A DNA stretch of 63,777 nucleotides, counting the filler, from Dugesia japonica (taxonomy: Eukaryota): the NCBI GenBank assembly GCA_001938525.1. It is 6 parts of 6 records of this genome, joined end to end, with 100 filler letters (N's around TTAATTAATTAA, not from the genome) between each part and the next. Parts side by side here need not be neighbours in the genome. Positions count along the whole stretch, not along the records: positions 33,445 to 44,731 come from MQRL01596303.1; 5 more parts are not named here. One strand, written 5' to 3'. The translations under genes and the position numbers were made by a program. This document shows, piece by piece, positions 14,258-46,090 of this stretch. Under the pieces are notes generated by a model. It worked only from the letters and a program-made list of their open reading frames with translations, made no database searches and was not told the DNA's origin. Numbering within the stretch: position 1 is the first letter of the stretch; each line of letters begins with the position of its first letter.

Positions 14258-14759
14258 AAAATTTTAACCGTTGATTTGTGAAGAACACTGAATAAACAAT
14301 TTTATTTAAAATAAAATTTTTTAAAATCAAAAGATCAAATTTATTGTTCTTTTTTTTCATTTATTCAATATTTTGGCTATGCCTTCTTCAGGAACAATAG
14401 TTCAGTAAATTCTGATTATAAACTTTGAAATAACAATTCAAATTAAATTAATTTGTTTAAATTTAATTTTCATTGGCTTTTACTTATTATTTTGAATTCA
14501 TTGAAAATATTTGCGGTTTATTGTTTGCCAACATTAAAATAAATCTTTTTTTATATTATAAATAATAACCAAGGAAAATTAAATTTAATCAAATTAATTT
14601 AATTTGAGTTGTTATTTCAAAGTTTATAATCAGAATTTACTGAACTATTGTTCCTGAAGAAGGCATAGCCAAAATATTGAATAAATNAAAAAAAGAAGAA
14701 CAATAATTTTGATCTTTTGCTTTTAAAACATTTTATTTTAAATAAAATTGTTTATTCAT
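14258..14759 (-). mobile_element. Large palindromic pLTR insertion with a mutated hammerhead in each arm
   Basis: Arms ~14289-14476 and ~14569-14758; TTGTTC-CTGAAGA-A-GGC-ATA-GCC-AAAA-TA-TT-GAATAA in both. Short tail-like TCAACGGTTA on the left (minus). Direct repeat AATTATTGAAT at 14247-14257 and 14760-14770. Confidence 0.8.
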
Positions 14760-33444: not shown

Positions 33445-33550
33445 AAAAACAAGAAAATAATTTGATCGAAGCTTTATTTTTTAATGAAATCTCAAAAACG
33501 ATCAATGGTTACGTCCAACAGTTATTCTCGCAATAATTGTAATTGTATAA
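33445..33550 (+). mobile_element. pLTR 3' part and tail at scaffold start
   Basis: TTTGATCGAAGCTTT..AATGAAATCTCAAAAACGATCAATGGTTACGTCCAACAGTTATTCTCGCAATAATTGT. Confidence 0.8.
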
Positions 33551-33738
33551 AAAATATAACTCTATATAATTTATAAGAGCATAATTTGTTCAAAAAGTAT
33601 AAATTTACGTACGCCTTAAATTTAAATAAATTTGGTATCGATAAATTTGTGTATTTCTCCAATATTTACTTCTAACTAAATATTATTGCACTATACACAT
33701 TTTCGTTGTTTTTAATAACAATGATATTTATTAACATA

Positions 33739-34064
33739 CAGTGGCGTAGCTACAGGGAAGCAATGCTTTCAAGCCTCCGAATTTATGGGGCCCCTTTTAA
33801 AATTTATTTATTTATATATAAAAAAATCTTTTTTTTTGTTTTTTGTTTATAAATATCGTTTATAAATATTCAAATATCAAATACATTTATTTATTTAAAA
33901 TTAAATTATAATATATCTATCTATTTAATATATTTATTTCATTCTCTGCTCTTATGTTAAAACATAATTTTCCTTTGTATAAACAGTTGAAATAAAAAAA
34001 ATGTTAGTAGGGGCCCCGTAGTTAGAATTTGCTTATGTTCCTAAAAAATCTAGTTACGCCACTG
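33739..34064. mobile_element. hAT-type MITE
   Basis: TIRs CAGTGGCGTAGCTA / TAGTTACGCCACTG, internal GGGCCCC motifs, perfect 8-bp TSD TTAACATA. Confidence 0.92.
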
Positions 34065-34788
34065 TTAACATATCAGTTAATTTAATTTCTTTGAGCAAAG
34101 TTTTTATTACTTATGTTACGCTTCTACAGGTTAAATTTTTTGAAATGTATTTTAAAAAAATTGATTTAATAAAAATTTTGAAATTTAAATAAGTCTGGGC
34201 CAGGTTCATCGGTGCACCGAAATTTTAAATCAATTATATAATCCCTTAGACATTAGATATACACTACCTTGCTGATTCATTTGATCAGGTTAAAGGGGAT
34301 CTGGGTTTAAAATCATGTATCTTCGCATGTTTATCGCGTGTTTCATTATAATGGATTTAAATAATTTAACCAAAAACGATACTTTTTATATAAATGATAT
34401 AAAAGTTATGCTTTTTGACTAATTTATGTCAAAGAAATTAATAAATTTTAATTGTTTACCGGTTTATTTGTCGATGCACCGTTCAAAATACGAACTGAAA
34501 GCACAAATAAATTATTGAATAAATAAAAAATATAATTTATAAAAGCATAATTTGTTCAAAAAGTATAAATTTACGTGCACCTTTCAATTCAGTCCTAATT
34601 GTCAATAAATTTGGTATCGATAAATTTGTGTATTTCTCCGATATTTACATTTTACTGAATATTATTGCAATATACACATTTTCGTTGTTTTTAATAAAAA
34701 TTATCATTTATTAACATGAGTTTGAGCAATGTTCCGCCTTTGTATTTAACTTGTTAAAATTTTCTATTATTGCATTTTACAATTTTAG

Positions 34789-34928
34789 ATGTTGATGATA
34801 TCAAAATTGTTATCAATTATGATTTTCCTAATCAGTTTGAGGATTATATACATAGAATTGGAAGAACTGCAAGAAGCGGGAAAAGAGGCATGTCGTATAC
34901 GTTTTTCAATAGAAAAAGTATCAAAAGT
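34789..34928 (+). CDS. DEAD-box RNA helicase DDX5/DDX17 (Dbp2/p68) family, penultimate exon
   Basis: ttttag|(D)[46 protein letters not shown]|gtaaga; motif [10 protein letters not shown]. Confidence 0.92.
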
Positions 34929-34974
34929 GTAAGATGAATTTGGTTATAAAATTGAAGTTAAATAATGTACACAG

Positions 34975-35520
34975 GCGTTGCCACTTATTAAAATAATGGA
35001 AGATGCTAAGCAAATGGTTCCCGATGGTTTGTATGATATGGCATTTGTTCCGAATGAAAAGCGTAGGAAAACCTTTAATAACCCGTTACCATTTTCTAAT
35101 GGATTTTCTCGACCTAATCCTCCTCCATTAGGAAATTCAACTTCTGCTTATAATTCGATTGATTTGACCAATTCAAAATTTAATTTGCATAAAGAAAAGC
35201 CAGTGCAAAACTTCGATTCTCCGAAAGATGAAAATCATGTTCAACCTTACAATACCTCTTCAGTTTCTCAGGTAAATGGGACTTCGCGGAGAGCCAGTAG
35301 ATTTGGTGATCGTGTTTCTCTGCCTACCCAATTTTTCACTGCACCACCTCCGTTAGATTCGTATGATATTGATTGGAAAACTGCTCCCCCACCACTACCA
35401 CCGGTTATTGCTGGATCTGTTAATGATAAACTTTACTCGACAATCTCTTCTAACTCTGAGCCTTACAATGATCTTATATATAATCACGTAGCGTTCTATG
35501 GGATACCTCCTCCACTCTAA
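34975..35520 (+). CDS. DDX5/DDX17-like helicase last exon with Pro-rich tail
   Basis: 46-nt GT-AG intron, then in-frame ALPLIKIMEDAKQMVPDGLYDMA; AATAAA at 35665. Confidence 0.88.
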   Translation, partial: ALPLIKIMEDAKQMVPDGLYDMAFVPNEKRRKTFNNPLPFSNGFSRPNPPPLGNSTSAYNSIDLTNSKFNLHKEKPVQNFDSPKDENHVQPYNTSSVSQVNGTSRRASRFGDRVSLPTQFFTAPPPLDSYDIDWKTAPPPLPPVIAGSVNDKLYSTISSNSEPYNDLIYNHVAFYGIPPPL

Positions 35521-36116
35521 AATTGAGCTAAATATTAATAAGCATTTTCTTTCGAACGAGACTGGTTGTTATTAATCAATTTTCATATCGTGAATATTTG
35601 AGAAATGATCAAGTTTGGTTGTTTTGGAGTTCGTAGGTTTTGATTAAACCATAGTTTTTTTCGTAATAAATGTTGAGTTTTAAAATTGTTTTTGATTTGG
35701 TAAACAGATAATTGCTGCTTATTTATTTGGTGAAATATTTTTGTTTTTTTAAACATAATTTGTTTGTTGTAACATTGGTGAAATTACTAAATATAAATAA
35801 ATGTTTTTAATCACATAATGAGACGAATTTTTATTTTCTAATCTCGAAGTTAGAGTGATTTTTTAATGTTGCATGCCTTAATATTAGAATTAAACAATTT
35901 TGGTAATATTTAACAATGTGTCTTCCTTTTACCACTTGATTATTCTCAATATTAGAGGTCCAGATGTCATTCATATGTGATATTGATCATAAGATTCCAT
36001 TCGATATTTTACTTAGTATTTTCGCTTTTATAAACAAGTATAATGTTGAACCTTGTAGCCACTGTTTCTGTCACAAAGAGTGAAGTTTCTTTAATGAATT
36101 TTTTTTCAAATTGACT

Positions 36117-38875
36117 TGACTTTCACAATCAGACTACATTTAAATACAATGTATTTATTAAAAATCCAAAATACAACAATTTAAACAAATTGTTAATCAT
36201 TGTAACTCTCCAATTCTTTAAAATGCTTTCCAGTTCTTTAACCATTCTATTCTTCTATACTTTGAACCTCGAGGAAATTTGATTTCTATTTGCCAATCTG
36301 ATATGTACTTCTTTACCTAATATCGTCTTTCATATAGGAAATCATTCTTCTTTCTTTTATGTAGTTCTATACGAACTAACACCCACTCCCCTACTTTGAA
36401 AATTCTCTGTCCACACTTTTAATTTTCAAAATTTGCCATTTTATTAACTGCTACATTTAAATTTTGTCTAAATGTCTCTATATTAACTGGTTTGTTTCCG
36501 TCTTTATATGCTTACATCCGCCTTCCAAAAATAATTTCAAATGGTGACAATTTTGTCGACTCTTGAACAGTAGCGTTTAAACTGAACTCAATTCTTGCAA
36601 GTTATGCATCCCTTTTTTTCTCGCTACAATTTCCTTTAAGTGACGTTGTAATCATATCTCTTATCGTATGAATTATTCTTTCTACCAGCCCATTCGATTG
36701 GTGTTGGTACAGAGAGCTGAACTCTTGTTTAATATTAAACTTTGCTAACTTCTCTAACTCTCAAACACTCTTCCTCTGTCAGCTAATATGCTCTTTGGTT
36801 TGTCGAAACGATATATCCATTTGTTCACAATTATTCAGAAAATTGTTTCTTCATTTATCTTTGATACCGCTGATGTACTTACTAGTTTGTTAAACCGATC
36901 GATAATCACCACCATATATTTTGTTCCTGATGCCACGGTTTCCATATGTGAAATATCTACTACCATTTGTCCACAATATCTTGACACTTTATAGGTAATG
37001 TTAGGTGAGTTTGGAAAACTCATCGAATCATTAACATCAGAATTCAACTCCATAAATTTATTAAAATAAAAACAATAACATCATTATTTGTTTACCATAA
37101 TTATAACCTCTTCTACCTTATTATCATGTATACATATTCTTTCATCATTCTCACCAAAATTGCCTTGTTTTTCTTGAATATCCACTGTATTTAACATCTT
37201 TGTTTTTAATAGTCTACTTTTGGGATCTTCGTGTGACGTTAGACATTGTGCACATGTACCGCATTCATTCCTTTCATTTTATATCCTCATTTGTATGAAG
37301 CGATCCTTTTCTTAACTGCTCAAATAATTAATCCAGGTTTGAAACTGTGATGTGATCGGCTTCTTGGTATTTAGCATAAAAGTTATAGCTTTATGATCTG
37401 TTCTGAGGATAAATCTCTTACCATATAAGTAATGTTTGAAATGAATACAAAATTAGTAAATTATGAGTAATTCTTTCCGCATAGTACAATATCTTTTTAA
37501 ATGACTCTTCATTGCGTGTGACATATATGCAAATACTCTTTCTTGCCCATTGTTGTCCCTTTGAGATGGTACTGCACCAATCGTGTTGAAACTCGCATCC
37601 GTGTCCAAAACAAATACTCTATATATATCTGGAAAACAAAATATGAGAATACCATCTATATAAACCATCGCTCCTTTTATTTTTCAGNTTAATTTATTTA
37701 TCATTTCCTGGAACATACCTGGTTTTGCTGCAATTCCATTCTATTGAAACAAAATTGCCATTGTTTAGTCAAAAAAGCCGTCTTCTCTTGAGAATCTTCA
37801 CTGAGTTTTACTTGGTAGTATGCATTTCCCGAGTCTATTGAGCTAAAATACTGTGTACTTTCCAAAGCTTCCAGCATTTCGTTCACATTTGGCATAGGAA
37901 AATTTTGTCTTTCTGTTATTGCAATGAGCTGTCTAAAATCTAACCATAATCGTATATCCTTTTTTTCCTTTTTCCAAACGCAGATTAATAGCATATTCTG
38001 AGAATTACACTTCTGAATGATACCGTTATCATACAAATTCTACTTAAATATCTTTTTTTGTGACAAGTCCAACATTCCACATGATAATTCTTTGGACTTT
38101 CTCTTTTCGTATGGCCATAATTCTGGCATGTCCAACTCTATGGTTCTGTGAATATTTTGGTCTCCTTTTAACACATTTGAATAAATATTTCTCTGTATTG
38201 CGTAAATATTTTCATTTCCAGCAATCCGTTGGAAATGTTCTTTATCTTCATATATCGGCAACTTTCATTTATGACCTTGTTATAAGTGTCTCTCGCAGAT
38301 TTTGATTCCTGACTTTCTTTGTCAGTAAATCATTTAAAATTTTGTCATGACTTAACCCTGAATTCAATACACAGTTAACTAGACTTCTTACTCGTATCTC
38401 AAACGTTGCAAATCTCTCTTTTGATTCTTGTTTAACTGTTGTAAGCTCCATGACCATTTCCGTGATAGATATTTTTAGCATAAAAGTGTCTAAAAACCAC
38501 TTGTTTGTCTCTTCTTTCGTAATTCCATCCTACTTAAACTTTTTCCATAAAACTCCGACTTTCTGTGATAATAAGAGATCAAAAATTCCCATCAAGTTCA
38601 AATCATTCACAGTGAGCCATTCTTCGATTTCTTTCACCCATGCTATAGCTTCTTATATTAAAAATTGATAATCTCTCGAGTCTTCTTAGACAAGATTTCT
38701 AAAATTGATTTTCACTTTTGTTGGCGTGTCACTATATTAACATCTTTGAGATGGTTGCCAGTTAAGTTACTTTCACCATCAGACTTCATTTCAATACAAT
38801 ATATTTATTTAAAATCAAAATTACAAAAATTTTTAATAATATTTAAACAAAGTCTTAATCATTGTAACTCTGACA
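36117..38875 (-). mobile_element. Ty3/Gypsy element with very short (~100 bp) LTRs
   Basis: Repeats 36117-36209 and 38767-38875; TGGCAACCAT PBS-like motif; gag, RT (LDFRQL, FPMPNV), RNase H (LDTDASF), integrase (VVDISHM, IIDRF). Confidence 0.88.
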
Positions 38876-38904
38876 GTCATTGATATCATGGTAAATAAAC
38901 CATA

Positions 38905-39085
38905 TCATTTAAAATAAAGGCTTCGATCAAAATTTTCTTTTTTGCTTTTTTTGAGATTGATTCAATCAATCTCAAAAAAAGCAAAAAAGAAAATTTTGAC
39001 CGAAGCTTTTATTTTAAATAAATTCTAAAAAATGATCAATGGTTACGTCCAACAATTATTCTCGCAATAATTGCAATTGTAAAAA
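38905..39085 (+). mobile_element. Palindromic pLTR insertion without ribozyme core
   Basis: Centre GAGATTGATT-C-AATCAATCTC (C at 38963); tail; direct repeat AAACCATATCA at 38897-38907 and 39083-39093. Confidence 0.9.
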
Positions 39086-40142
39086 CCATATCAATTAAAT
39101 AAAGTTAATCGTGGAGTCTTTTATGAAAGATACTATTCCTGGAGAAATGAAATAGTTTGTGTAAGATTAATAATAACTTTAAGAGCATCTTTATCAGTTG
39201 ACTGAACAATATCGTTTGAAGCATCATCAACTATTAATTGAATTAAATATTTTTTGAAAGCATTAAAGTCATGTTTGTTTGGGAGGTTTGTGACTCGAGA
39301 GTGGGAAAGAACGTATAATGAAATAAAATCTAGTTAATTTTTCTTCCACGAGGATAGTTGAAAGGCTTTTAAAATTTGTTTAAGTTTTTTTCAAAATACT
39401 GAAGAAAATGTTGGGGTAAAACACCTGCTATAGAAAATAAAAATAACGATATGTAAACCCGAAATTTGAAAGAATGTCATAAGAAAAGAAAACAAAGAAT
39501 CCAGACAAAAAGAAATAACGCAGTTCAGTTAAAGAAAGAAATAATTAAAGAGAAAATCAGTTTAGGGAGCTAAAACTTACGAAATAACCAAAAAACTCTA
39601 GAATCACATTAGGAAACAATTCAGAAATAAGAAAGTCAAAGAAGAAAAGAAGTACCAAAAACTATAATAATAATAATGAATAACAACCAAGCAATTAGTT
39701 AATTGAACAAAAATAAGGAAATCATATTGAATTAATAATTGAAGAAAGAGAAAATAGATTAAATGGATTAATTAGTATAAGAAAACGACGAAATTAAATT
39801 AATTTTAGATCAAAAACGAAAAATGAACATCCAATTAATAATTAAGAAGAAAATAAATTAAATAATTTATTTAAAATAAAATAAATCATACAAACTAAAA
39901 TGATTTATTATAAAAAAGAAAATTAAATTTATACGAACATATAAGAAAATGAAGACTTCCCATTGAGATAAAATTAGCAATTAAGAAAATTATAATCAAG
40001 AAGAAATCGGAAATTTCGAACATTCAAGTCCAAAAACTATAGGAAGACTAAGAAAAAAGATTGAACAATGGTAATCCAAAAATATTGGAATTCCAAAATT
40101 CTAACTAATAAGAAAAACCAAGTGTCAGAACTAGAACAAACC

Positions 40143-40245
40143 AACCAATAAAAACGCAATAATTGCATATTAACCAATAAAAACGAAGAGGGCGTATAAG
40201 AAAACCGGTATAAATACCGATGTAATTTTCAGCAAAAAATCATTC
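40143..40245 (+). promoter_or_regulatory. Pol II promoter-like module, possibly an LTR U3/R junction
   Basis: AACCAATAAAAACG twice (40143, 40172), GGGCG, TATAAATA at 40209, Inr-like TCATT at 40240. Confidence 0.5.
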
Positions 40246-41102
40246 AAAATCATCATCAAATTTCTGAATAGAAAGTCTCAACTATTACAAGCGGTAAGCA
40301 TTTCATCAATTTGGTTTTGGGCAACGGTTTCCGACTTGAGAAAAATAAGATGAGAAGAAACGGAAGATTTCCTGAGTGACAATAATAGCTACCGAAGAGA
40401 TACCTATCCAAGCGCCGTGCTTGCTCCGGATCGGGATACAGACCACGTTAGTTTTATTGATTGCTGTAATTAGTAAACTAGTTTATAACAAGTAAAAATT
40501 TTAGTAATCATCTTATGTTTTTCACTAGGCAAATATTTTGTTTTAATAAAGACGAATTTAACCATAAAACTCCCATAATGGGATAATTTATGAATTAAGG
40601 GTATTAAGTAAATTAACTGGGTTAAGCTTTCGTAACCATTCTGTATTGTAAGATTTGATTAAATTGTTACCAATAATGCTGAGTAGTATAGTAGTGCAGT
40701 ATCTAATGTCATGTTTATTTATCGCGTGTATTTAAACAATTAGTATTTAATATATTTTTATCAGTATTTTTCTTAACGAGTTATAAGTATTTTATACTTA
40801 TTTGTCAGTATGTATTTATAAATAATCAGTATTCAAGGAATCAATAATAAAGTGAACGATTTAATCAGTATAATAACTAACGTACTAGTATAAAATATAA
40901 ATTATCAGTATAATAACTAAAAGATCAGCATTGGATATAAACAATCAGTATTATGATATCAATGCGTCAGAATGTAATATAATTAATCAGTATTCGATGT
41001 AAAAATATCAGTAGTTTATTTATGAAAATTTCCAAAATCCCTTTATTTGGTAATTTTTTTAATTTTAGTCCTTTTAAATTACTATTATTACTATTTTATT
41101 TA

Positions 41103-42308
41103 GGCGCACCGCCAAAATAACAATTTCAAAATAACGATCTTTAAAATAGCAACCATCAAAATGGCGACTACTTCATAATGGCAACCATCAAAATTGCGAC
41201 TACTTCATAATGGTGACCAATAAAATAGCGACTACTTCAAAATGACGAATAATTCAAATGGCGAATTTATTTAATTTTAAGAAATTCTTAATCGATTATT
41301 TTGCTGAATTTTTAAAAGAAATGATAATATTCAATCATGGATTGTTTGTGTTTGCAGTAGAATTTGATTTGTGTCGTTAATAAGTTGGAAATTATTTCAC
41401 AAAAAAATTAAGTCAATAAAACAGTCATATCCGTGAAACTTTTATTTAAAAGTTTCATTTATTTAAACGTAAGTATACTTTTTTAAATATACATATAAAT
41501 TAATTTAAACATATTTGCATTCCTATTATACTTCTTTTTTCAGAGTTTGCCACCTTTTCCGTTATTATTATTCTATTGAATTCTTTCTTTAAGGATCTAT
41601 GTTATGAAATAATAGCTATTTTAACGATTGCTATTATTAAATAATCGTTATTTTATGATCTTTTTTAAAAAGTAGTCGCTATTTTAGAAACTCCGAAAAA
41701 TTAGGTAAAACTATAAATCGAGGAAATTGATTTTTAAAAATTTAAATTTTTATCCATAATGTAAGAACAATAATCAAATATTGATTTAAATACTACTATG
41801 ACTAAAAGGAAAACATCAATAAAAAATTAAAAAATAAATTAATCACGAAATAAAACTCTTAAAAAAGAAGTATAATAAGAATGCAAATATGCTTAAATTA
41901 ATTCATATATATACTTGCGTTTAAATAAATGAAAATTTTATCTAAAAGCTCCACGAATATCACTGTTTTATTGACTTAATATTTTTATTTTGAAATAATT
42001 TCCAACTTATTACCGACACAAATCAAATTCTAATCACATGTAAACACAAACAATCCATGATTTGATATTATCGTTTCTTTTAAAAAATTCAGCAATATAT
42101 TCGATTCAGAATTTCATAAAATTAAATGAATTTACGAAATATTTAATATAAAAAAATATTTCAACAATTAATTTGAAAAAATATTTAAAATTTACACAAA
42201 AGATTTAAATTAGTCCTATTTTGATAATCGCCATTTTGAAGTAGTCACTATTTTGAAGATAACTGTTTTGTGATCGCTATTTTGTGATCACCATTATTAA
42301 CGTAAACC
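41103..42308. mobile_element. Mutator-like foldback element
   Basis: GG..CC termini, 9-bp TSD TTTTATTTA, subterminal AAAATGGCGACTACTTC-type arrays inverted at both ends, internal ~280-bp inverted repeat (41263-41540 / 41861-42132). Confidence 0.85.
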
Positions 42309-42338
42309 TTTTATTTATAGTATTTTTTAATTTAGAAA

Positions 42339-44030
42339 ATGGAATCAAATTTAGAATATTATTAGTCTGATGATGATGCAGAAACGACGTTTAAACCAGA
42401 AAGATAACGGAAAAGGCAACGAACTTGAATTAAAATAAGCGCATTAAACTGCAAAACGGATGCTTTAGAAGAAATAGCCAAAGAAGAAATATGGAGTTCA
42501 TATTTAAAAAAAACGGTAGACGGTTTAAAAATATGTTTTCGTTGCAATAAAGAAAAAACGGATAGGAGTACAATGTAATGCATGGTTATTTATGATTGAA
42601 CATATAAAAACTGAGACTGTTTCTATTTTTAAAACTGTGGAGGAGCATTCACATGATAGTGACCAGTAATATCCACCAAAAGAAATAGAAATTTAATTTG
42701 ATTTGAAAATGAAACCCAAAAAGAATGTTGTTAATTTTAATTGAAAAAGAGTACAAGTTTAAAAACAAAAGACAACTAAGAAATCATTTGTTAAAATTAA
42801 GAAAGCAAAAATATGGACCTTCGAAAATCAGTTTGGCTGACCTGGAGCAGTAGATTCTGATGACACTGCATTAGAAATTTCATATTATGTTCATCATGAA
42901 AATGAATCTAGTGAAGAAAATGAAGCTCAAAAATTTGAAATTTTCATTTCAACTATGCGTTTGTTATAAACCTGTGCAGTGTCAAAAGTAATTCATACTA
43001 CTGCCACCCACAAATTGGTTTGGGAGGGTATGCCCACCAAGTTGGTTGGCACAACAGATATGAGTCGCCATTTATATCTGTTTGGTATAGCAGTATGTTC
43101 ACACGAGAAATAAAAATATTCCGTGGTCATTTTCCGATCATTTAATATTGGCGGAAAAATGTTAATATAGATATAAAGTTTTTAGTGTTTGATGCTTTTT
43201 ATGCATTCAGAAATACTTTCACTGATGATTTTGGAACTGATAAAGTTTTAATCATTTGTTGGGCACATATGAGGCGTGCTGTTATAAAGAAAATAGAATC
43301 GTTGGTAAAAAACATATTGGTCATTTACACATAGCCTCATCATCTGATATATTAGAGCAAGCATTACGGCTATTTATAAATAAGTGGACATCAAAAGAAA
43401 ATGCATTGTTGAACTATATGAAGCTTCAATGGTTTACCTTACATAAAAATTTGTATGAAAGTGCAGGATATCGAATTCCTTCCACAAACAATGCTTCAGA
43501 GACATTTAAATTAGTAATTAAAAAAGAAGCTACTTTTAGAGAAGATAAACTCTTGCTAGATTTTTGAATTTAATAGTCGAGACGACACATATGTGGAAAA
43601 TAACAATTATGTTAAAGTTTTTAACAAAGCGATAACTGTAGACTTAGAGCTTTGGATTAAAAGCTATCATTGGGCAAAAGAAAAAATAAATCTTTCGCAT
43701 TACAATAGTTCAGGTGAATATATATTCTCGTCAGACAAAAATCCAATTATATTAAAAAATGATTAAAAATTTTTTAAAGAAATGAAGTGNAAATTCTTTG
43801 ATGATTATAAAAATAAAACCTTCAAATTTTTGGTTGTAAGATTACAACACCCATTAAACAATATCACCAATTCTACCTGTTTATGTCCAGAATTTTTGAA
43901 GAAGTATTTGTGCAAACATGTAATAGGATTAATTATAAAACTTAAATATATTAAACCACAAAACAATTACCCATTGGAGAGACACGTCGACGAAATCGAT
44001 CCCCATTTGCAACTCGTGCACTTATAATAG
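42339..44030 (+). pseudogene. MULE transposase with SWIM zinc finger, disrupted
   Basis: IHTTATHKLVWEGMP..VGTTD..FGIAVCSHE, CWAHMRR, PSTNNASETF, SWIM CLCPEFLKKYLCKHVIG. Confidence 0.88.
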
Positions 44031-44324
44031 ATTAGTTATTTTTGTATCTTTGCAGTTCATGTAGCATTTTTTCTATATTAGGCATCAGACAGGCTTGTCT
44101 AAAAGTTACTTTATTTAATTGACTACAATCAAAACACAAAATATTCCTTATTTTTATAGAACCTAGATAAGTGGTGCGTTCCTTTACAAATTATATTTAC
44201 TAATAATCCTGAGCTGCTCCAAATTATGAATAACTTCTTTTATTTTACTTTCTAAATAAACAGGTTATCTTCTGGGTTTCGTAAATATTGAAGTGATTTC
44301 TGTTACTGGGTTATTTTTCACAAA

Positions 44325-44690
44325 CTATGCACATCCTATGCCCCACTTATGAGCCAGAAAAATACAAGAATGTTTTTTAATTAACCTATATAATGTATGA
44401 TCTTTACTTCTTTGAATAATTGAAATTACTTTCAAAAATTGTTTACTATCCCGCGTTATTTCGTTTATTTTTAGTACGAAGATAAGTTTTTCGTTACCAG
44501 ATATATGGAATTTATAATTATTATTAATTTCTATTTCTTGTCCTAAAATCATCAGTTTAATATTAAATTTATTCAACAAATCTATCCCCGCTATTAATTT
44601 TGAAAATGCTTTTAGCAACATAGAATTTAATTATTTTTATTTCTTTATTAATTGTATCGTATAGCCTACAAATTCTCTCTATTTCTAAAG
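44325..44690 (-). mobile_element. Gypsy protease/pol-linker fragment
   Basis: IAGIDLL and IFLAHKWGIG parallel IILGID and SNKWDIG of the 24.9-kb element. Confidence 0.55.
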
Positions 44691-46090
44691 AATTGTTATT
44701 TGCGCAAAAATTATTAATATCAGGTTTTACANNNNNNNNNNNNNNNNNNNNNNNNNNNNNNNNNNNNNNNNNNNNTTAATTAATTAANNNNNNNNNNNNN
44801 NNNNNNNNNNNNNNNNNNNNNNNNNNNNNNNTAGCAATTGTTTAGCATAGTAATTATATTTTTATATGTATAATTTCTTTTTGATTAAATAAGTTATTTT
44901 GTAAGAATAATTTTTCCAATTCTCACCATCACAAGCGAAGTAGTGAAATTGGATAGTGAGATAGATTTTCCACATCTACTTTTAGTCGTTTAGATCACGG
45001 TTTAGAAACAGATTGCTAACGTCTCATTAAATTGTTAATTATAAATCTTTTTTTAAAAATATTTGGAAATTTGAATATGAAATTTGAAACAATGGAAATG
45101 GTATTAATAGAGGTTTGGTATAATATAAAATGAATTCAGTGAATATATACATTTACTAATTAAAGTGTAAATTTGATAAAATCTGTAATAAAATACTCAC
45201 TAAAATATGTCTTGCAGGTCTATTTTATAATTACGGGGAAACAAAATAATACATTTCGATCATCAATGTCTACAAAATACAGTTTTTAACAAATATATAC
45301 ATTTACTATTTAACATAAAAAATCAGTAAATTGTAAATAAAAATAAAAATAATGAAAACATCTTTATTTAATTCAGCTTAATTTTTGATAGATTCTAATT
45401 GTAATATAAACATTAGAGTAAATATGTTTTAAATTATCCAAGTGTGCATCAATCAAAAATAAATAATAAATCATTTAATTATTAATCAAAATAACTAGTG
45501 AAAGCTTGAATAGTTCATATCAAATTTGAAATACTGGAAATCTCAATTATTTCTAAAAAAAATAAAATCATTGTTGTCATTCCAAACACTTAATCATCCC
45601 GATAGACTAGTTTTGATTATCAATTAACGGGGAAATGAATCAAAAATTTTATACTTGATGGAATTTTTTATAACTATTTTATTAGTAAATAATATTCTTT
45701 GGAAAAAATTATTTTATCGTACTGTTAATGATGTAATTTCAGCTTTTTATTTATTTATTTCGTTTATTTATCAGTTTATTATATAATACTGATTTATTGA
45801 ATAGAGCAGACTGAAACAGTTAGAGACATAAGACAACAACTAGTTTGACATTATAATTTGATTAGAAATCATCCAAGATCATAAATAACTTGGTTGAAAT
45901 GAGTAAACATAAATTAAATGACTTTATAAATAAATTTTTATTGTAAATAAAATAATACAATTATTAATAATAAATTAATTGTGTTGTAAAATAATAGTAA
46001 ATGTAATAAATTAAAAATATCATTTAATATACTTTAAAATAAATTTTTATTATTACTATTATTCTCATAATTATTACGATTATTATTATA

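What the first reader, a model, noticed from the sequence alone, without database searches (positions are those of the whole stretch)
38905..39085. Palindromes turn around exactly at the predicted ribozyme cleavage site
Seen: the intact ribozymes predict cuts UC^GAAUUGUUAUC (26017/26016) and UC^GAAUCAAUCUC (53928/53929). Three independent ribozyme-less palindromes have arms beginning at that same G: 38963 (GATTGATT-C-AATCAATC, no spacer), 12963 (GATAATAATTC|AAATTATTATC) and 10921/10933 (CAATTC, 11-nt spacer, GAATTG). Inference: the template was the self-cleaved ~125-nt 3' product. RT ran off its 5' end, then snapped back or jumped to make the inverted arm. This would be a genomic record of in vivo cleavage defining a mobile RNA's 5' end. 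Copies at 14258, 25952 and 53762 keep the core and would come from uncleaved templates.
Basis: partly seen in the sequence, partly recalled or inferred. Interest (0 to 1): 0.9.

Follow-up and report, generated by a model that had tools for sequence, protein, structure and literature searches.

The report
Snap-back scar of a short retroposon
A near-perfect 113-base palindrome joined to a very abundant ~120-base repeat is the scar of one retroposition event in which DNA copying reached the front end of a short RNA and turned back; whether a self-cutting ribozyme made that front end could not be checked here.

Summary
The palindrome is real. Its arms are 38907-38962 and 38964-39019 (54 of 56 bases pair), around a single central C at 38963. 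The right arm runs on to about 39084 as a ~121-nt unit of a very abundant dispersed repeat; about 22,000 public-run contigs match it. A second copy lies at 33447-33557.

The whole structure sits between a 22-23-nt target-site duplication (38897-38919 and 39083-39104). Both arms carry the same two minority variants. It is therefore one insertion made from one template.

The centre falls on the discrete 5' end of the unit. Other contigs stop matching exactly at 38963/38964. A palindrome in a second subfamily also has both arms starting at its first G. At least two other palindromic contigs turn around near unit position 29-32 instead.

The best reading is target-primed reverse transcription of a short RNA, run-off at its 5' end, then snap-back or second-strand priming, joined to the target by about 12 nt of microhomology. 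Head-to-head structures of this kind are already known for Penelope-like elements, R2 and L1.

The striking claim, that this 5' end is a hammerhead cleavage site, could not be tested. This piece has no hammerhead, no ribozyme-bearing copy could be fetched, and RNA-seq shows no pile of starts there.

The parts
38897..38919 (+). Left copy of the target-site duplication (AAACCATATCA... 23 nt). Its last ~13 nt (38907-38919) double as the outer end of the inverted arm, a microhomology zone with a mosaic of target-like and unit-like bases.
   Evidence: Local alignment with 39083-39104 gives 21 matches, 1 mismatch and 1 gap. The wider alignment scores 38 against a null maximum of 29 in 2,819 random window pairs. 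The exact 11-mer AAACCATATCA lies at both borders.
38907..38963 (-). Inverted arm: reverse complement of unit positions 1-57, beginning (on the minus strand) with G at 38963.
   Evidence: the repeat finder pair I3, 56 nt, 96%. It shares the minority variants at 38945 and 38937 with the mirror positions 38981 and 38989 (table 3).
38963..38963 (.). Palindrome centre: a single C:G pair and the turn-around point. It equals position +1 of the unit on the minus-strand arm.
38964..39084 (+). Direct, apparently full-length ~121-nt repeat unit: a 5' AATCAATCTC, an A-rich tract, then a conserved 3' half.
   Evidence: Sharp family 3' boundary, with loose ends behind 39083-39085 in all four runs. 23,028 and 21,608 contigs were laid. 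Contigs X1 record 6 and X2 record 14 align exactly to 38964-39084. A second copy matches at 85.6%.
39053..39073 (+). 8-bp stem with a 5-nt loop (CAATTATT-CTCGC-AATAATTG), 10-12 nt from the unit's 3' end. It is the most abundant and least variable part of the family and is a candidate reverse-transcriptase recognition element (inferred).
   Evidence: Present in the MFE and centroid fold. The highest depth is in bins 39036-39077, and no variant of >=10% is listed between 39047 and 39073. Copy A keeps the stem through a G-U pair.
39083..39104 (+). Right copy of the target-site duplication (22 nt). Its first As overlap the unit's terminal A-run.
   Evidence: The unique flank begins after it, at depth 8-15. 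The 3' junction contig is also seen in a second sample (X2 record 16, 5 differences).
33447..33557 (+). Second copy of the unit (positions ~20-128 of the query). Its 5' part is cut off by the edge of the piece.
   Evidence: blastn 85.6% over 111 nt; the repeat finder family D2.

Best explanation
This is the scar of one retroposition event of a short (~121 nt), very abundant, non-coding retroposon RNA.

Proposed steps:
1. An element-encoded endonuclease and reverse transcriptase, acting in trans, nicked an AT-rich target.
2. It primed cDNA at the RNA's 3' end, next to a conserved 8-bp stem-loop, and copied the RNA to its very 5' end (G at +1).
3. The inverted arm was then made in one of two ways. 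Either the cDNA 3' end turned back and copied about 57 nt of itself (snap-back), or the nicked second target strand primed a second cDNA on the same RNA at positions ~44-57 (dual or twin priming).
4. The free end was joined to the target through about 12 nt of microhomology (ATTTAAAATAAA).

The product is [TSD][inverted 1-57][direct 1-121][TSD].

Shown here: the palindrome, the duplication, the common origin of the arms, the discrete family 5' and 3' ends, and the microhomology.

Inferred: the RNA intermediate, the enzyme, and the choice between snap-back and dual priming. The mosaic of unit-like and target-like bases in 38907-38919 slightly favours a DNA:DNA heteroduplex, that is snap-back.

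[quoted passage not shown] What creates that end is not settled. Hammerhead self-cleavage of a longer transcript is plausible (about 0.4) but was not tested here.
For: - Palindrome of 56+56 nt, 96% complementary, 1-nt centre; fold z = -16.5.
- A 22-23-nt direct repeat brackets the whole structure, score 38 against a null maximum of 29, 0 of 2,819.
- Both arms carry G at unit position 18 and G at position 26, where 51-81% of family contigs have other bases. Each arm also has one private change (table 3: 38945/38981, 38937/38989, 39000, 38919).
- The family has a sharp 3' end at 39083-39085 with heterogeneous flanks (table 7).
- Other copies stop matching exactly at 38963/38964 (table 8 records 6 and 14; table 5c joint 38963>39067).
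- A second-subfamily palindrome has both arms starting at G of GAATTGTT (table 5c, joint 38940>39039).
- The insertion's 3' junction is present in a second sample with 5 SNPs (record 16).
- Precedents from papers: head-to-head inverted pLTRs with palindromic junctions and 8-10-bp TSDs in Adineta vaga PLEs, interpreted as self-priming (PMC3846280); a PLE protein that nicks and extends both strands in vitro (PMC11167929); a 'snap-back' class of 5' junctions in R2-protein insertions (PMC11331408).
Against: - No RNA intermediate or enzyme is visible in the piece. The only RT nearby belongs to a degraded Ty3/gypsy-type element.
- The palindrome junction itself could not be confirmed in independent reads, because 31-mer contigs cannot span a perfect 56-bp palindrome (no piece spans it).
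- Palindromic contigs that turn around at about unit position 29-32 show that turn-back is not tied to the full-length end (joints 38931>38995 and 38934>39022).
- Pure twin priming would not convert primer bases to unit-like bases. Pure intramolecular snap-back with a 1-nt loop is sterically awkward. The exact path is therefore unresolved.
Confidence: 0.68

Rival explanations
1. The formation mechanism is the same, and in addition the template's 5' end was made by hammerhead self-cleavage. The ~121-nt unit would be the 3' cleavage product of a longer ribozyme-bearing transcript (a Penelope-like pLTR or an animal retrozyme). The palindrome would then be a genomic record of in vivo cleavage.
For:
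- UC^G fits the U16.1-H17/N1.1 rule of hammerheads (established knowledge).
- In the one PLE studied in vitro, the hammerhead cut lies only ~90 nt upstream of the RT start site, so a cleaved template would give a ~100-nt insert (PMC11167929).
- Hammerheads are near-universal in canonical PLE pLTRs (PMC4209133, PMC8557442).
Against: - No hammerhead lies anywhere in 33445-44731.
- No ribozyme-bearing copy could be fetched.
- RNA-seq shows no start pile at 38964 (table 6).
- For the Anolis PLE, cleavage was dispensable in vitro and no reads ended at the cut site (PMC11167929).
- Some palindromes turn elsewhere.
Confidence: 0.4
2. The formation mechanism is the same, but the unit is an ordinary SINE-like or LINE-tail retroposon. 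Its 5' end would be set by transcription initiation or another processing step, with no ribozyme involved.
For: - A 3' stem-loop followed by ...TGTAAAA and short AATTGY repeats resembles the 3' tails of stringent-type LINE/SINE pairs (my own knowledge of L2/CR1-type elements; structure).
- Abundance is enormous and rises toward the 3' end (table 2).
- No PLE ORF or hammerhead is present in the piece.
Against: - No pol III A/B boxes are evident in the unit (by eye).
- Head-to-head palindromic junctions are a hallmark of PLEs rather than of LINE tails (PMC3846280).
Confidence: 0.28
3. A DNA-level inverted duplication arose after an ordinary insertion. A break or stalled fork at the unit's 5' border was repaired by fold-back priming, creating the left arm.
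For: Fold-back repair makes spacer-less palindromes and uses microhomology. The arms are near-identical.
Against: - It needs the break to fall by chance within 1 nt of the unit's 5' end.
- It does not explain the target-site duplication lying outside the inverted arm.
- It does not explain the recurrence of +1-centred palindromes in another subfamily.
Confidence: 0.08
4. Two independent insertions landed head-to-head, for example because the element's endonuclease prefers its own sequence.
For: PLE proteins can nick their own pLTR region (PMC11167929). The family is dense enough for nested hits, with 2.5 copies in 11 kb.
Against: - One TSD flanks the pair, and there is none between them.
- The arms share two minority variants.
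- The arms abut to the nucleotide at both 5' ends.
Confidence: 0.05
5. The palindrome is an assembly or library artefact, or it is primarily a hairpin-RNA (miRNA/siRNA precursor) gene rather than a transposition scar.
For: - Rfam miRNA precursor models give E down to 7e-11 on the hairpin.
- Perfect palindromes are hard to assemble, and no contig spans it.
Against: - All Rfam scores are far below the gathering thresholds (60 vs 117, 57 vs 95), so they reflect only a generic long hairpin.
- The TSD and the unit's 3' junction in a second sample argue for a real insertion.
- Very few RNA reads cover the centre (table 2).
Confidence: 0.05

Closest known systems
Head-to-head inverted pLTRs with palindromic junctions in Penelope-like elements (Adineta vaga Pen2/Pen3; general PLE architecture in Craig et al. 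2021)
   Same: An inverted 5'-side copy abuts a direct copy, with a palindrome at the junction. One short TSD (8-10 bp there, 22 bp here) flanks the whole. Self-priming or dual-strand priming is invoked. The target is AT-rich (PMC3846280, PMC8557442, PMC11167929).
   Different: There is no ORF, no full pLTR and no hammerhead here, only a ~121-nt unit. The arms meet at what looks like the very end of the template rather than overlapping inside a pLTR. Membership in PLEs is unproven.
'Snap-back' 5' junctions in R2-protein-mediated (PRINT) insertions
   Same: The first-strand cDNA 3' end is extended on a nearby DNA strand, giving reverse-complemented element sequence at the 5' junction (PMC11331408).
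   Different: That is an engineered R2 system in human cells, where the junctions are rare. Here it is a natural genomic copy of an unrelated short element.
L1 twin priming (5'-inverted L1 insertions)
   Same: The structure is flanked by a TSD, the inverted 5' part is joined to a direct 3' part, and the second nicked strand primes internally on the RNA by microhomology (PMC2837659).
   Different: Twin priming inverts the upstream part of the RNA with only a few bases duplicated or lost. Here the inverted arm duplicates the same 57 nt as the direct arm, which requires both cDNAs to reach the RNA 5' end or a true snap-back.
R2 HDV-like ribozyme, whose cleavage site sets the RNA 5' end and predicts the type of genomic 5' junction
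   Different: The ribozyme class (HDV-like) and element differ, and the R2 ribozyme stays on the mobile RNA. Here the hammerhead would be left behind on the 5' product, and the link is untested.
Animal hammerhead-bearing non-autonomous elements (non-LTR retrozymes, Schistosoma Sm-alpha-type repeats, solo min-HHR copies of PLEs)
   Same: These are short, very abundant, non-coding repeats thought to derive from PLE pLTRs (PMC4209133; bioRxiv 10.64898/2026.07.22.740005).
   Different: Those carry the ribozyme. The unit here lacks it and would be the ribozyme-free 3' cleavage product.

Membership tests
Penelope-like element (pLTR-derived insertion) | PLE reverse transcriptase plus GIY-YIG endonuclease ORF in the element or an adjacent partial tandem | tested here: not met
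   A Pfam scan of 10 of the 14 ORFs of at least 60 aa in the piece found only RVT_1, RT_RNaseH and rve of a degraded LTR element, plus a SWIM finger. A non-autonomous fragment need not carry the ORF.
Penelope-like element (pLTR-derived insertion) | Hammerhead motif inside the repeat (canonical PLE clades) | tested here: not met
   No Rfam hammerhead at E<=10 in 33445-44731. No CUGANGA match is next to a unit copy. Full-length relatives were not obtainable.
Penelope-like element (pLTR-derived insertion) | Head-to-head inverted copy with a palindromic junction, the whole flanked by one TSD | tested here: met
   compare PMC3846280.
Penelope-like element (pLTR-derived insertion) | Optional 30-40-bp 'tail' at one end, reflecting two RT start sites | tested here: inconclusive
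   Family 3' ends cluster at 39078 and 39082-39085 (table 7). No 30-40-nt extension class could be resolved.
Hammerhead ribozyme cleavage product | Conserved core (CUGANGA ... GAAA) with helices I-III immediately upstream of unit position 1 in uncleaved copies, and a scissile bond after H17 | not testable with these tools
   Copies of this genome outside the piece could not be fetched.
Hammerhead ribozyme cleavage product | RNA molecules with a 5' end at position 1 in vivo | tested here: inconclusive
   No pile of starts was found in one single-end and one oligo-dT RNA-seq run (table 6). These libraries are unsuited to 120-nt 5'-OH RNAs, and the reads come from copies embedded in longer transcripts.
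TPRT insertion with snap-back or twin priming | TSD flanking the inverted plus direct parts, and microhomology where the inverted part meets the target | tested here: met
   TSD 38897-38919 and 39083-39104. 38907-38919 matches the reverse complement of unit positions ~44-57 at 12 of 13 bases and the other TSD copy at 11 of 13.
TPRT insertion with snap-back or twin priming | Classical twin priming: the inverted segment comes from RNA upstream of the direct segment, without large duplication | tested here: not met
   The inverted arm duplicates the same 57 nt as the direct arm. This fits snap-back, or two cDNAs that both ran off the RNA 5' end.
microRNA precursor (MIR837, mir-1468, mir-4679) | Score at or above the Rfam gathering threshold | tested here: not met
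   60.4 vs 117, 57.0 vs 95 and 43.9 vs 88 bits.
Stringent-type LINE/SINE 3' tail | Conserved 3' stem-loop followed by a short terminal repeat shared with a partner LINE | tested here: inconclusive
   The stem-loop at 39053-39073 and the ...TGTAAAA end are present. No partner LINE is available for comparison.

The most novel reading that the evidence does not exclude
The ~121-nt unit is the ribozyme-free 3' product of in vivo hammerhead self-cleavage. This fragment is itself an efficient retroposition template that has multiplied to very high copy number. Spacer-less palindromes centred on +1 would then be a genome-wide fossil record of cleavage. That would be the first in vivo evidence that hammerheads of endonuclease-positive Penelope-type or retrozyme-type elements cut before reverse transcription.
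Probability: 0.35. Interest if true: 0.8.

Novelty: new member of a known kind. Interest (0 to 1): 0.5.

Why it matters
The function of hammerheads in metazoan Penelope-like elements is an acknowledged open question. Craig et al. [quoted passage not shown] In the 2024 Anolis work, cleavage was dispensable in vitro and no RNA-seq reads ended at the cut site.

If palindrome centres and unit 5' ends pile up exactly at the predicted scissile bond, genome sequence alone would show two things. The ribozyme cuts in vivo, and cleaved RNA is reverse-transcribed. The question would then become testable by a simple census plus 5'-OH end mapping.

Without the ribozyme link, the locus is a clean textbook example of a snap-back or dual-priming retroposition scar. 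It is useful for annotation but not surprising.

Tried and rejected
- Rfam scan of the piece at E<=10 found no hammerhead, only sub-threshold miRNA/snoRNA look-alikes caused by the long hairpin.
- A regex search for the CUGANGA core on both strands gave eight hits, none next to a unit copy.
- Exact-pattern scans meant to fetch other copies were all blank. I ran 21-26-mers from the conserved 3' half against metagenome contigs twice, prokaryotic genome contigs twice and viral contigs twice. The organism is not in those collections.
- The protein route to more DNA of this genome failed. The gypsy RT fragment found only five ENA metagenome proteins at 64-70% identity. One contig was fetched (L001, 36% GC) and holds no unit.
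- A full-text search of papers for the 5'-terminal and 3' motifs returned only lac-operator primers.
- I first read the depth profile as a 5'-truncation gradient, then rejected that reading. The steps at ~39035 and ~38983 coincide with loose ends whose consensus is a diverged homologue of the unit or an A-rich tract. They are alignment breaks between subfamilies and a variable A-tract, not ends of copies.
- The 'opposite strands' joints are artefacts of laying plain copies on a palindromic reference.
- I considered and rejected the idea that the palindrome is hammerhead helix I left behind after deletion of the core. The arms pair for 56 nt, far beyond any helix I.

Full report
**1. What is in the sequence**

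Positions 38907-38962 and 38964-39019 form an inverted repeat of 56 nt per arm. It is 96% complementary, with a single base (C, 38963) between the arms (sequence). As RNA, the 201-nt region folds at -78.9 kcal/mol, against -22.3 +/- 3.4 for shuffles (z = -16.5).

On the minus strand the left arm begins G-AATCAATCTC. The right arm begins AATCAATCTC at 38964.

The right arm does not stop at 39019. It continues to about 39084. This ~121-nt stretch recurs at 33447-33557 at 85.6% identity, with its 5' part cut off by the edge of the piece.

**2. The unit is a very abundant dispersed repeat**

I laid Logan contigs of two DNA runs and raw reads of two RNA runs on 38700-39300 at 80% likeness. This placed 23,028 and 21,608 contigs on the unit, while the unique right flank has depth 8-15.

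- All four runs show loose ends 'behind' 39083-39085 with heterogeneous AT-rich continuations. The family therefore has a sharp 3' end with different flanks in each copy.
- Summed depth is highest over 39036-39077. That stretch holds an 8-bp stem with a 5-nt loop (39053-39073), for which no frequent variant is listed.
- The depth steps further 5' coincide with loose ends whose consensus is a diverged homologue (before 39034) or an A-rich tract (before 38983). I treat them as alignment breaks, not as truncation points.
- Two listed contigs align exactly to 38964-39084 (X1 record 6, X2 record 14). Another matches the inverted arm up to 38963, then has one G and a short 3' fragment (joint 38963>39067). 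The family therefore has a discrete 5' end at the palindrome centre.
- The 3' junction with the unique flank is also present in a second sample with five differences (X2 record 16). The insertion is real and not private to the assembly.

**3. One event, one template**

The whole structure is bracketed by a direct repeat, 38897-38919 against 39083-39104. This repeat has 21 matches, one mismatch and one gap, and begins with an exact 11-mer. The local alignment score is 38, against a maximum of 29 in 2,819 random window pairs of the piece.

Both arms carry G at unit position 18 and G at position 26, where 51-81% of family contigs have another base. Each arm has one private change, 39000 C and 38919 G (table 3). 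Two independent insertions or a chance juxtaposition are therefore very unlikely.

The outer 13 nt of the left arm (38907-38919) match the reverse complement of unit positions ~44-57 at 12 of 13 bases. They also match the other copy of the target duplication at 11 of 13 bases. This is a microhomology zone with a mosaic of unit-like and target-like bases.

**4. Mechanism**

The anatomy [TSD][inverted 1-57][direct 1-121][TSD] is what target-primed reverse transcription gives under a specific sequence of events. The first cDNA runs off the 5' end of a short RNA, an inverted copy is made, and the end is annealed to the target by microhomology. The inverted copy can arise in two ways:

- **Snap-back.** The cDNA 3' end is extended on the nascent DNA.
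- **Dual priming.** The second nicked strand primes on the same RNA at positions ~44-57 and also runs off at +1.

The mosaic bases favour a DNA:DNA heteroduplex, which points slightly to snap-back. One contig has a complete inverted arm but only 18 nt of direct arm, which is easier to make by dual priming. Both routes may operate. The RNA intermediate, the enzyme and the route are inferred.

Precedents in the literature:

- Head-to-head inverted pLTRs with palindromic junctions and 8-10-bp TSDs in rotifer Penelope elements, attributed to self-priming (PMC3846280).
- The general PLE architecture, with an adjacent inverted 5'-truncated copy (PMC8557442).
- A purified PLE protein that nicks and extends both strands (PMC11167929).
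- A 'snap-back' class of 5' junctions in R2-protein insertions (PMC11331408).
- L1 twin priming (PMC2837659).

**5. The ribozyme claim**

Nothing in 33445-44731 is a hammerhead. I could not obtain any copy of the family from outside the piece. Six collection scans were blank. The protein database holds only distant ENA relatives of the neighbouring gypsy element. A sequence search of papers found nothing relevant.

RNA-seq gives no pile of starts at 38964, and 99% of the RNA reads run on into unrelated sequence. They therefore come from copies embedded in longer transcripts. Standard libraries would miss a 120-nt 5'-OH RNA, so this result is not evidence against the claim.

In favour of the claim:

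- UC^G fits the hammerhead cleavage rule (established knowledge).
- In the Anolis PLE the cut lies only ~90 nt upstream of the RT start site, so a cleaved template would give an insert of this size (PMC11167929).

Against the claim:

- At least two palindromic contigs turn around at TTAA|TTAA, near unit position 29-32.
- For the Anolis PLE, cleavage was dispensable in vitro and no reads ended at the cut site.
- The unit's 3' end, a stem-loop followed by ...TGTAAAA, would suit a LINE/SINE tail as well as a pLTR.

I put the ribozyme origin of the 5' end at about 0.4.

**6. Comparison and novelty**

As verified, the locus is a new example of a known kind of structure, a snap-back or dual-priming retroposition scar of the PLE type. 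The idea that a ribozyme cut sets a retrotransposon's 5' end and can be read from genomic junctions has a precedent in R2 (PMC3774820). It has not been shown for hammerheads of endonuclease-positive PLE-type elements, whose function is still described as unclear (PMC8557442, PMC4209133).

**7. Verdict**

- The hammerhead link is untested.
- Interest is moderate (0.5). It would rise to about 0.8 if the census and end mapping listed under next steps show a peak at the predicted scissile bond.

Noticed in passing
window 36800-38500 (minus strand), with repeats 36179-36494 and 38710-38886: Degraded Ty3/gypsy-type LTR retrotransposon. The ORFs are broken and hit RVT_1, RT_RNaseH and rve. Two direct repeats that look like LTR remnants lie on either side (repeat finder D8 and D13). 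The palindrome insertion sits about 26 nt beyond the right-hand repeat, whose family (38760-38872) is itself several hundred-fold repeated in the public runs.
   Followed up: partly
window 33739-34064, TSD 33731-33738 and 34065-34072: A 326-bp MITE-like insertion with terminal inverted repeats CAGTGGCGTAGCTA... and ...TAGTTACGCCACTG, and a perfect 8-bp duplication TTAACATA, which suggests a hAT-type element. It interrupts one of two ~190-nt direct repeats (33564-33738 against 34530-34733). It has an internal GGGGCCCC-centred inverted repeat (I25).
   Followed up: partly
window 41100-42300: A ~1.1-kb foldback-like element. Its arms are nested inverted repeats of ~450 nt at 80-92% (I1, I2, I4-I7), with subterminal 32-nt tandem repeats (D3, D4, sequence). 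It lies about 1 kb upstream of ORFs with a SWIM zinc finger (43256-44027), so it may be a non-autonomous MULE/foldback transposon.
   Followed up: no
window 34978-35520 (+): A 180-aa open frame rich in proline. Its nearest named Atlas clusters are C-terminal regions of DEAD-box RNA helicases. There is no Pfam hit. It is probably the last exon of a host helicase gene.
   Followed up: partly
window 39053-39084: The family's most conserved part is an 8-bp stem with a 5-nt loop, followed by CAATTG-TAAAA. Copy A has AATTGT twice at the same place (33540-33552). This recalls stem-loop plus short-repeat 3' tails recognised by some LINE reverse transcriptases. It bears on which enzyme moves the unit.
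   Followed up: partly
window 38887-38896 against 39075-39082: The target DNA just left of the duplication (ATGGTAAAT) resembles the unit's own 3' end (ATTGTAAAA). This may be chance in AT-rich DNA, or a preference of the endonuclease for sites that look like the element's end.
   Followed up: no
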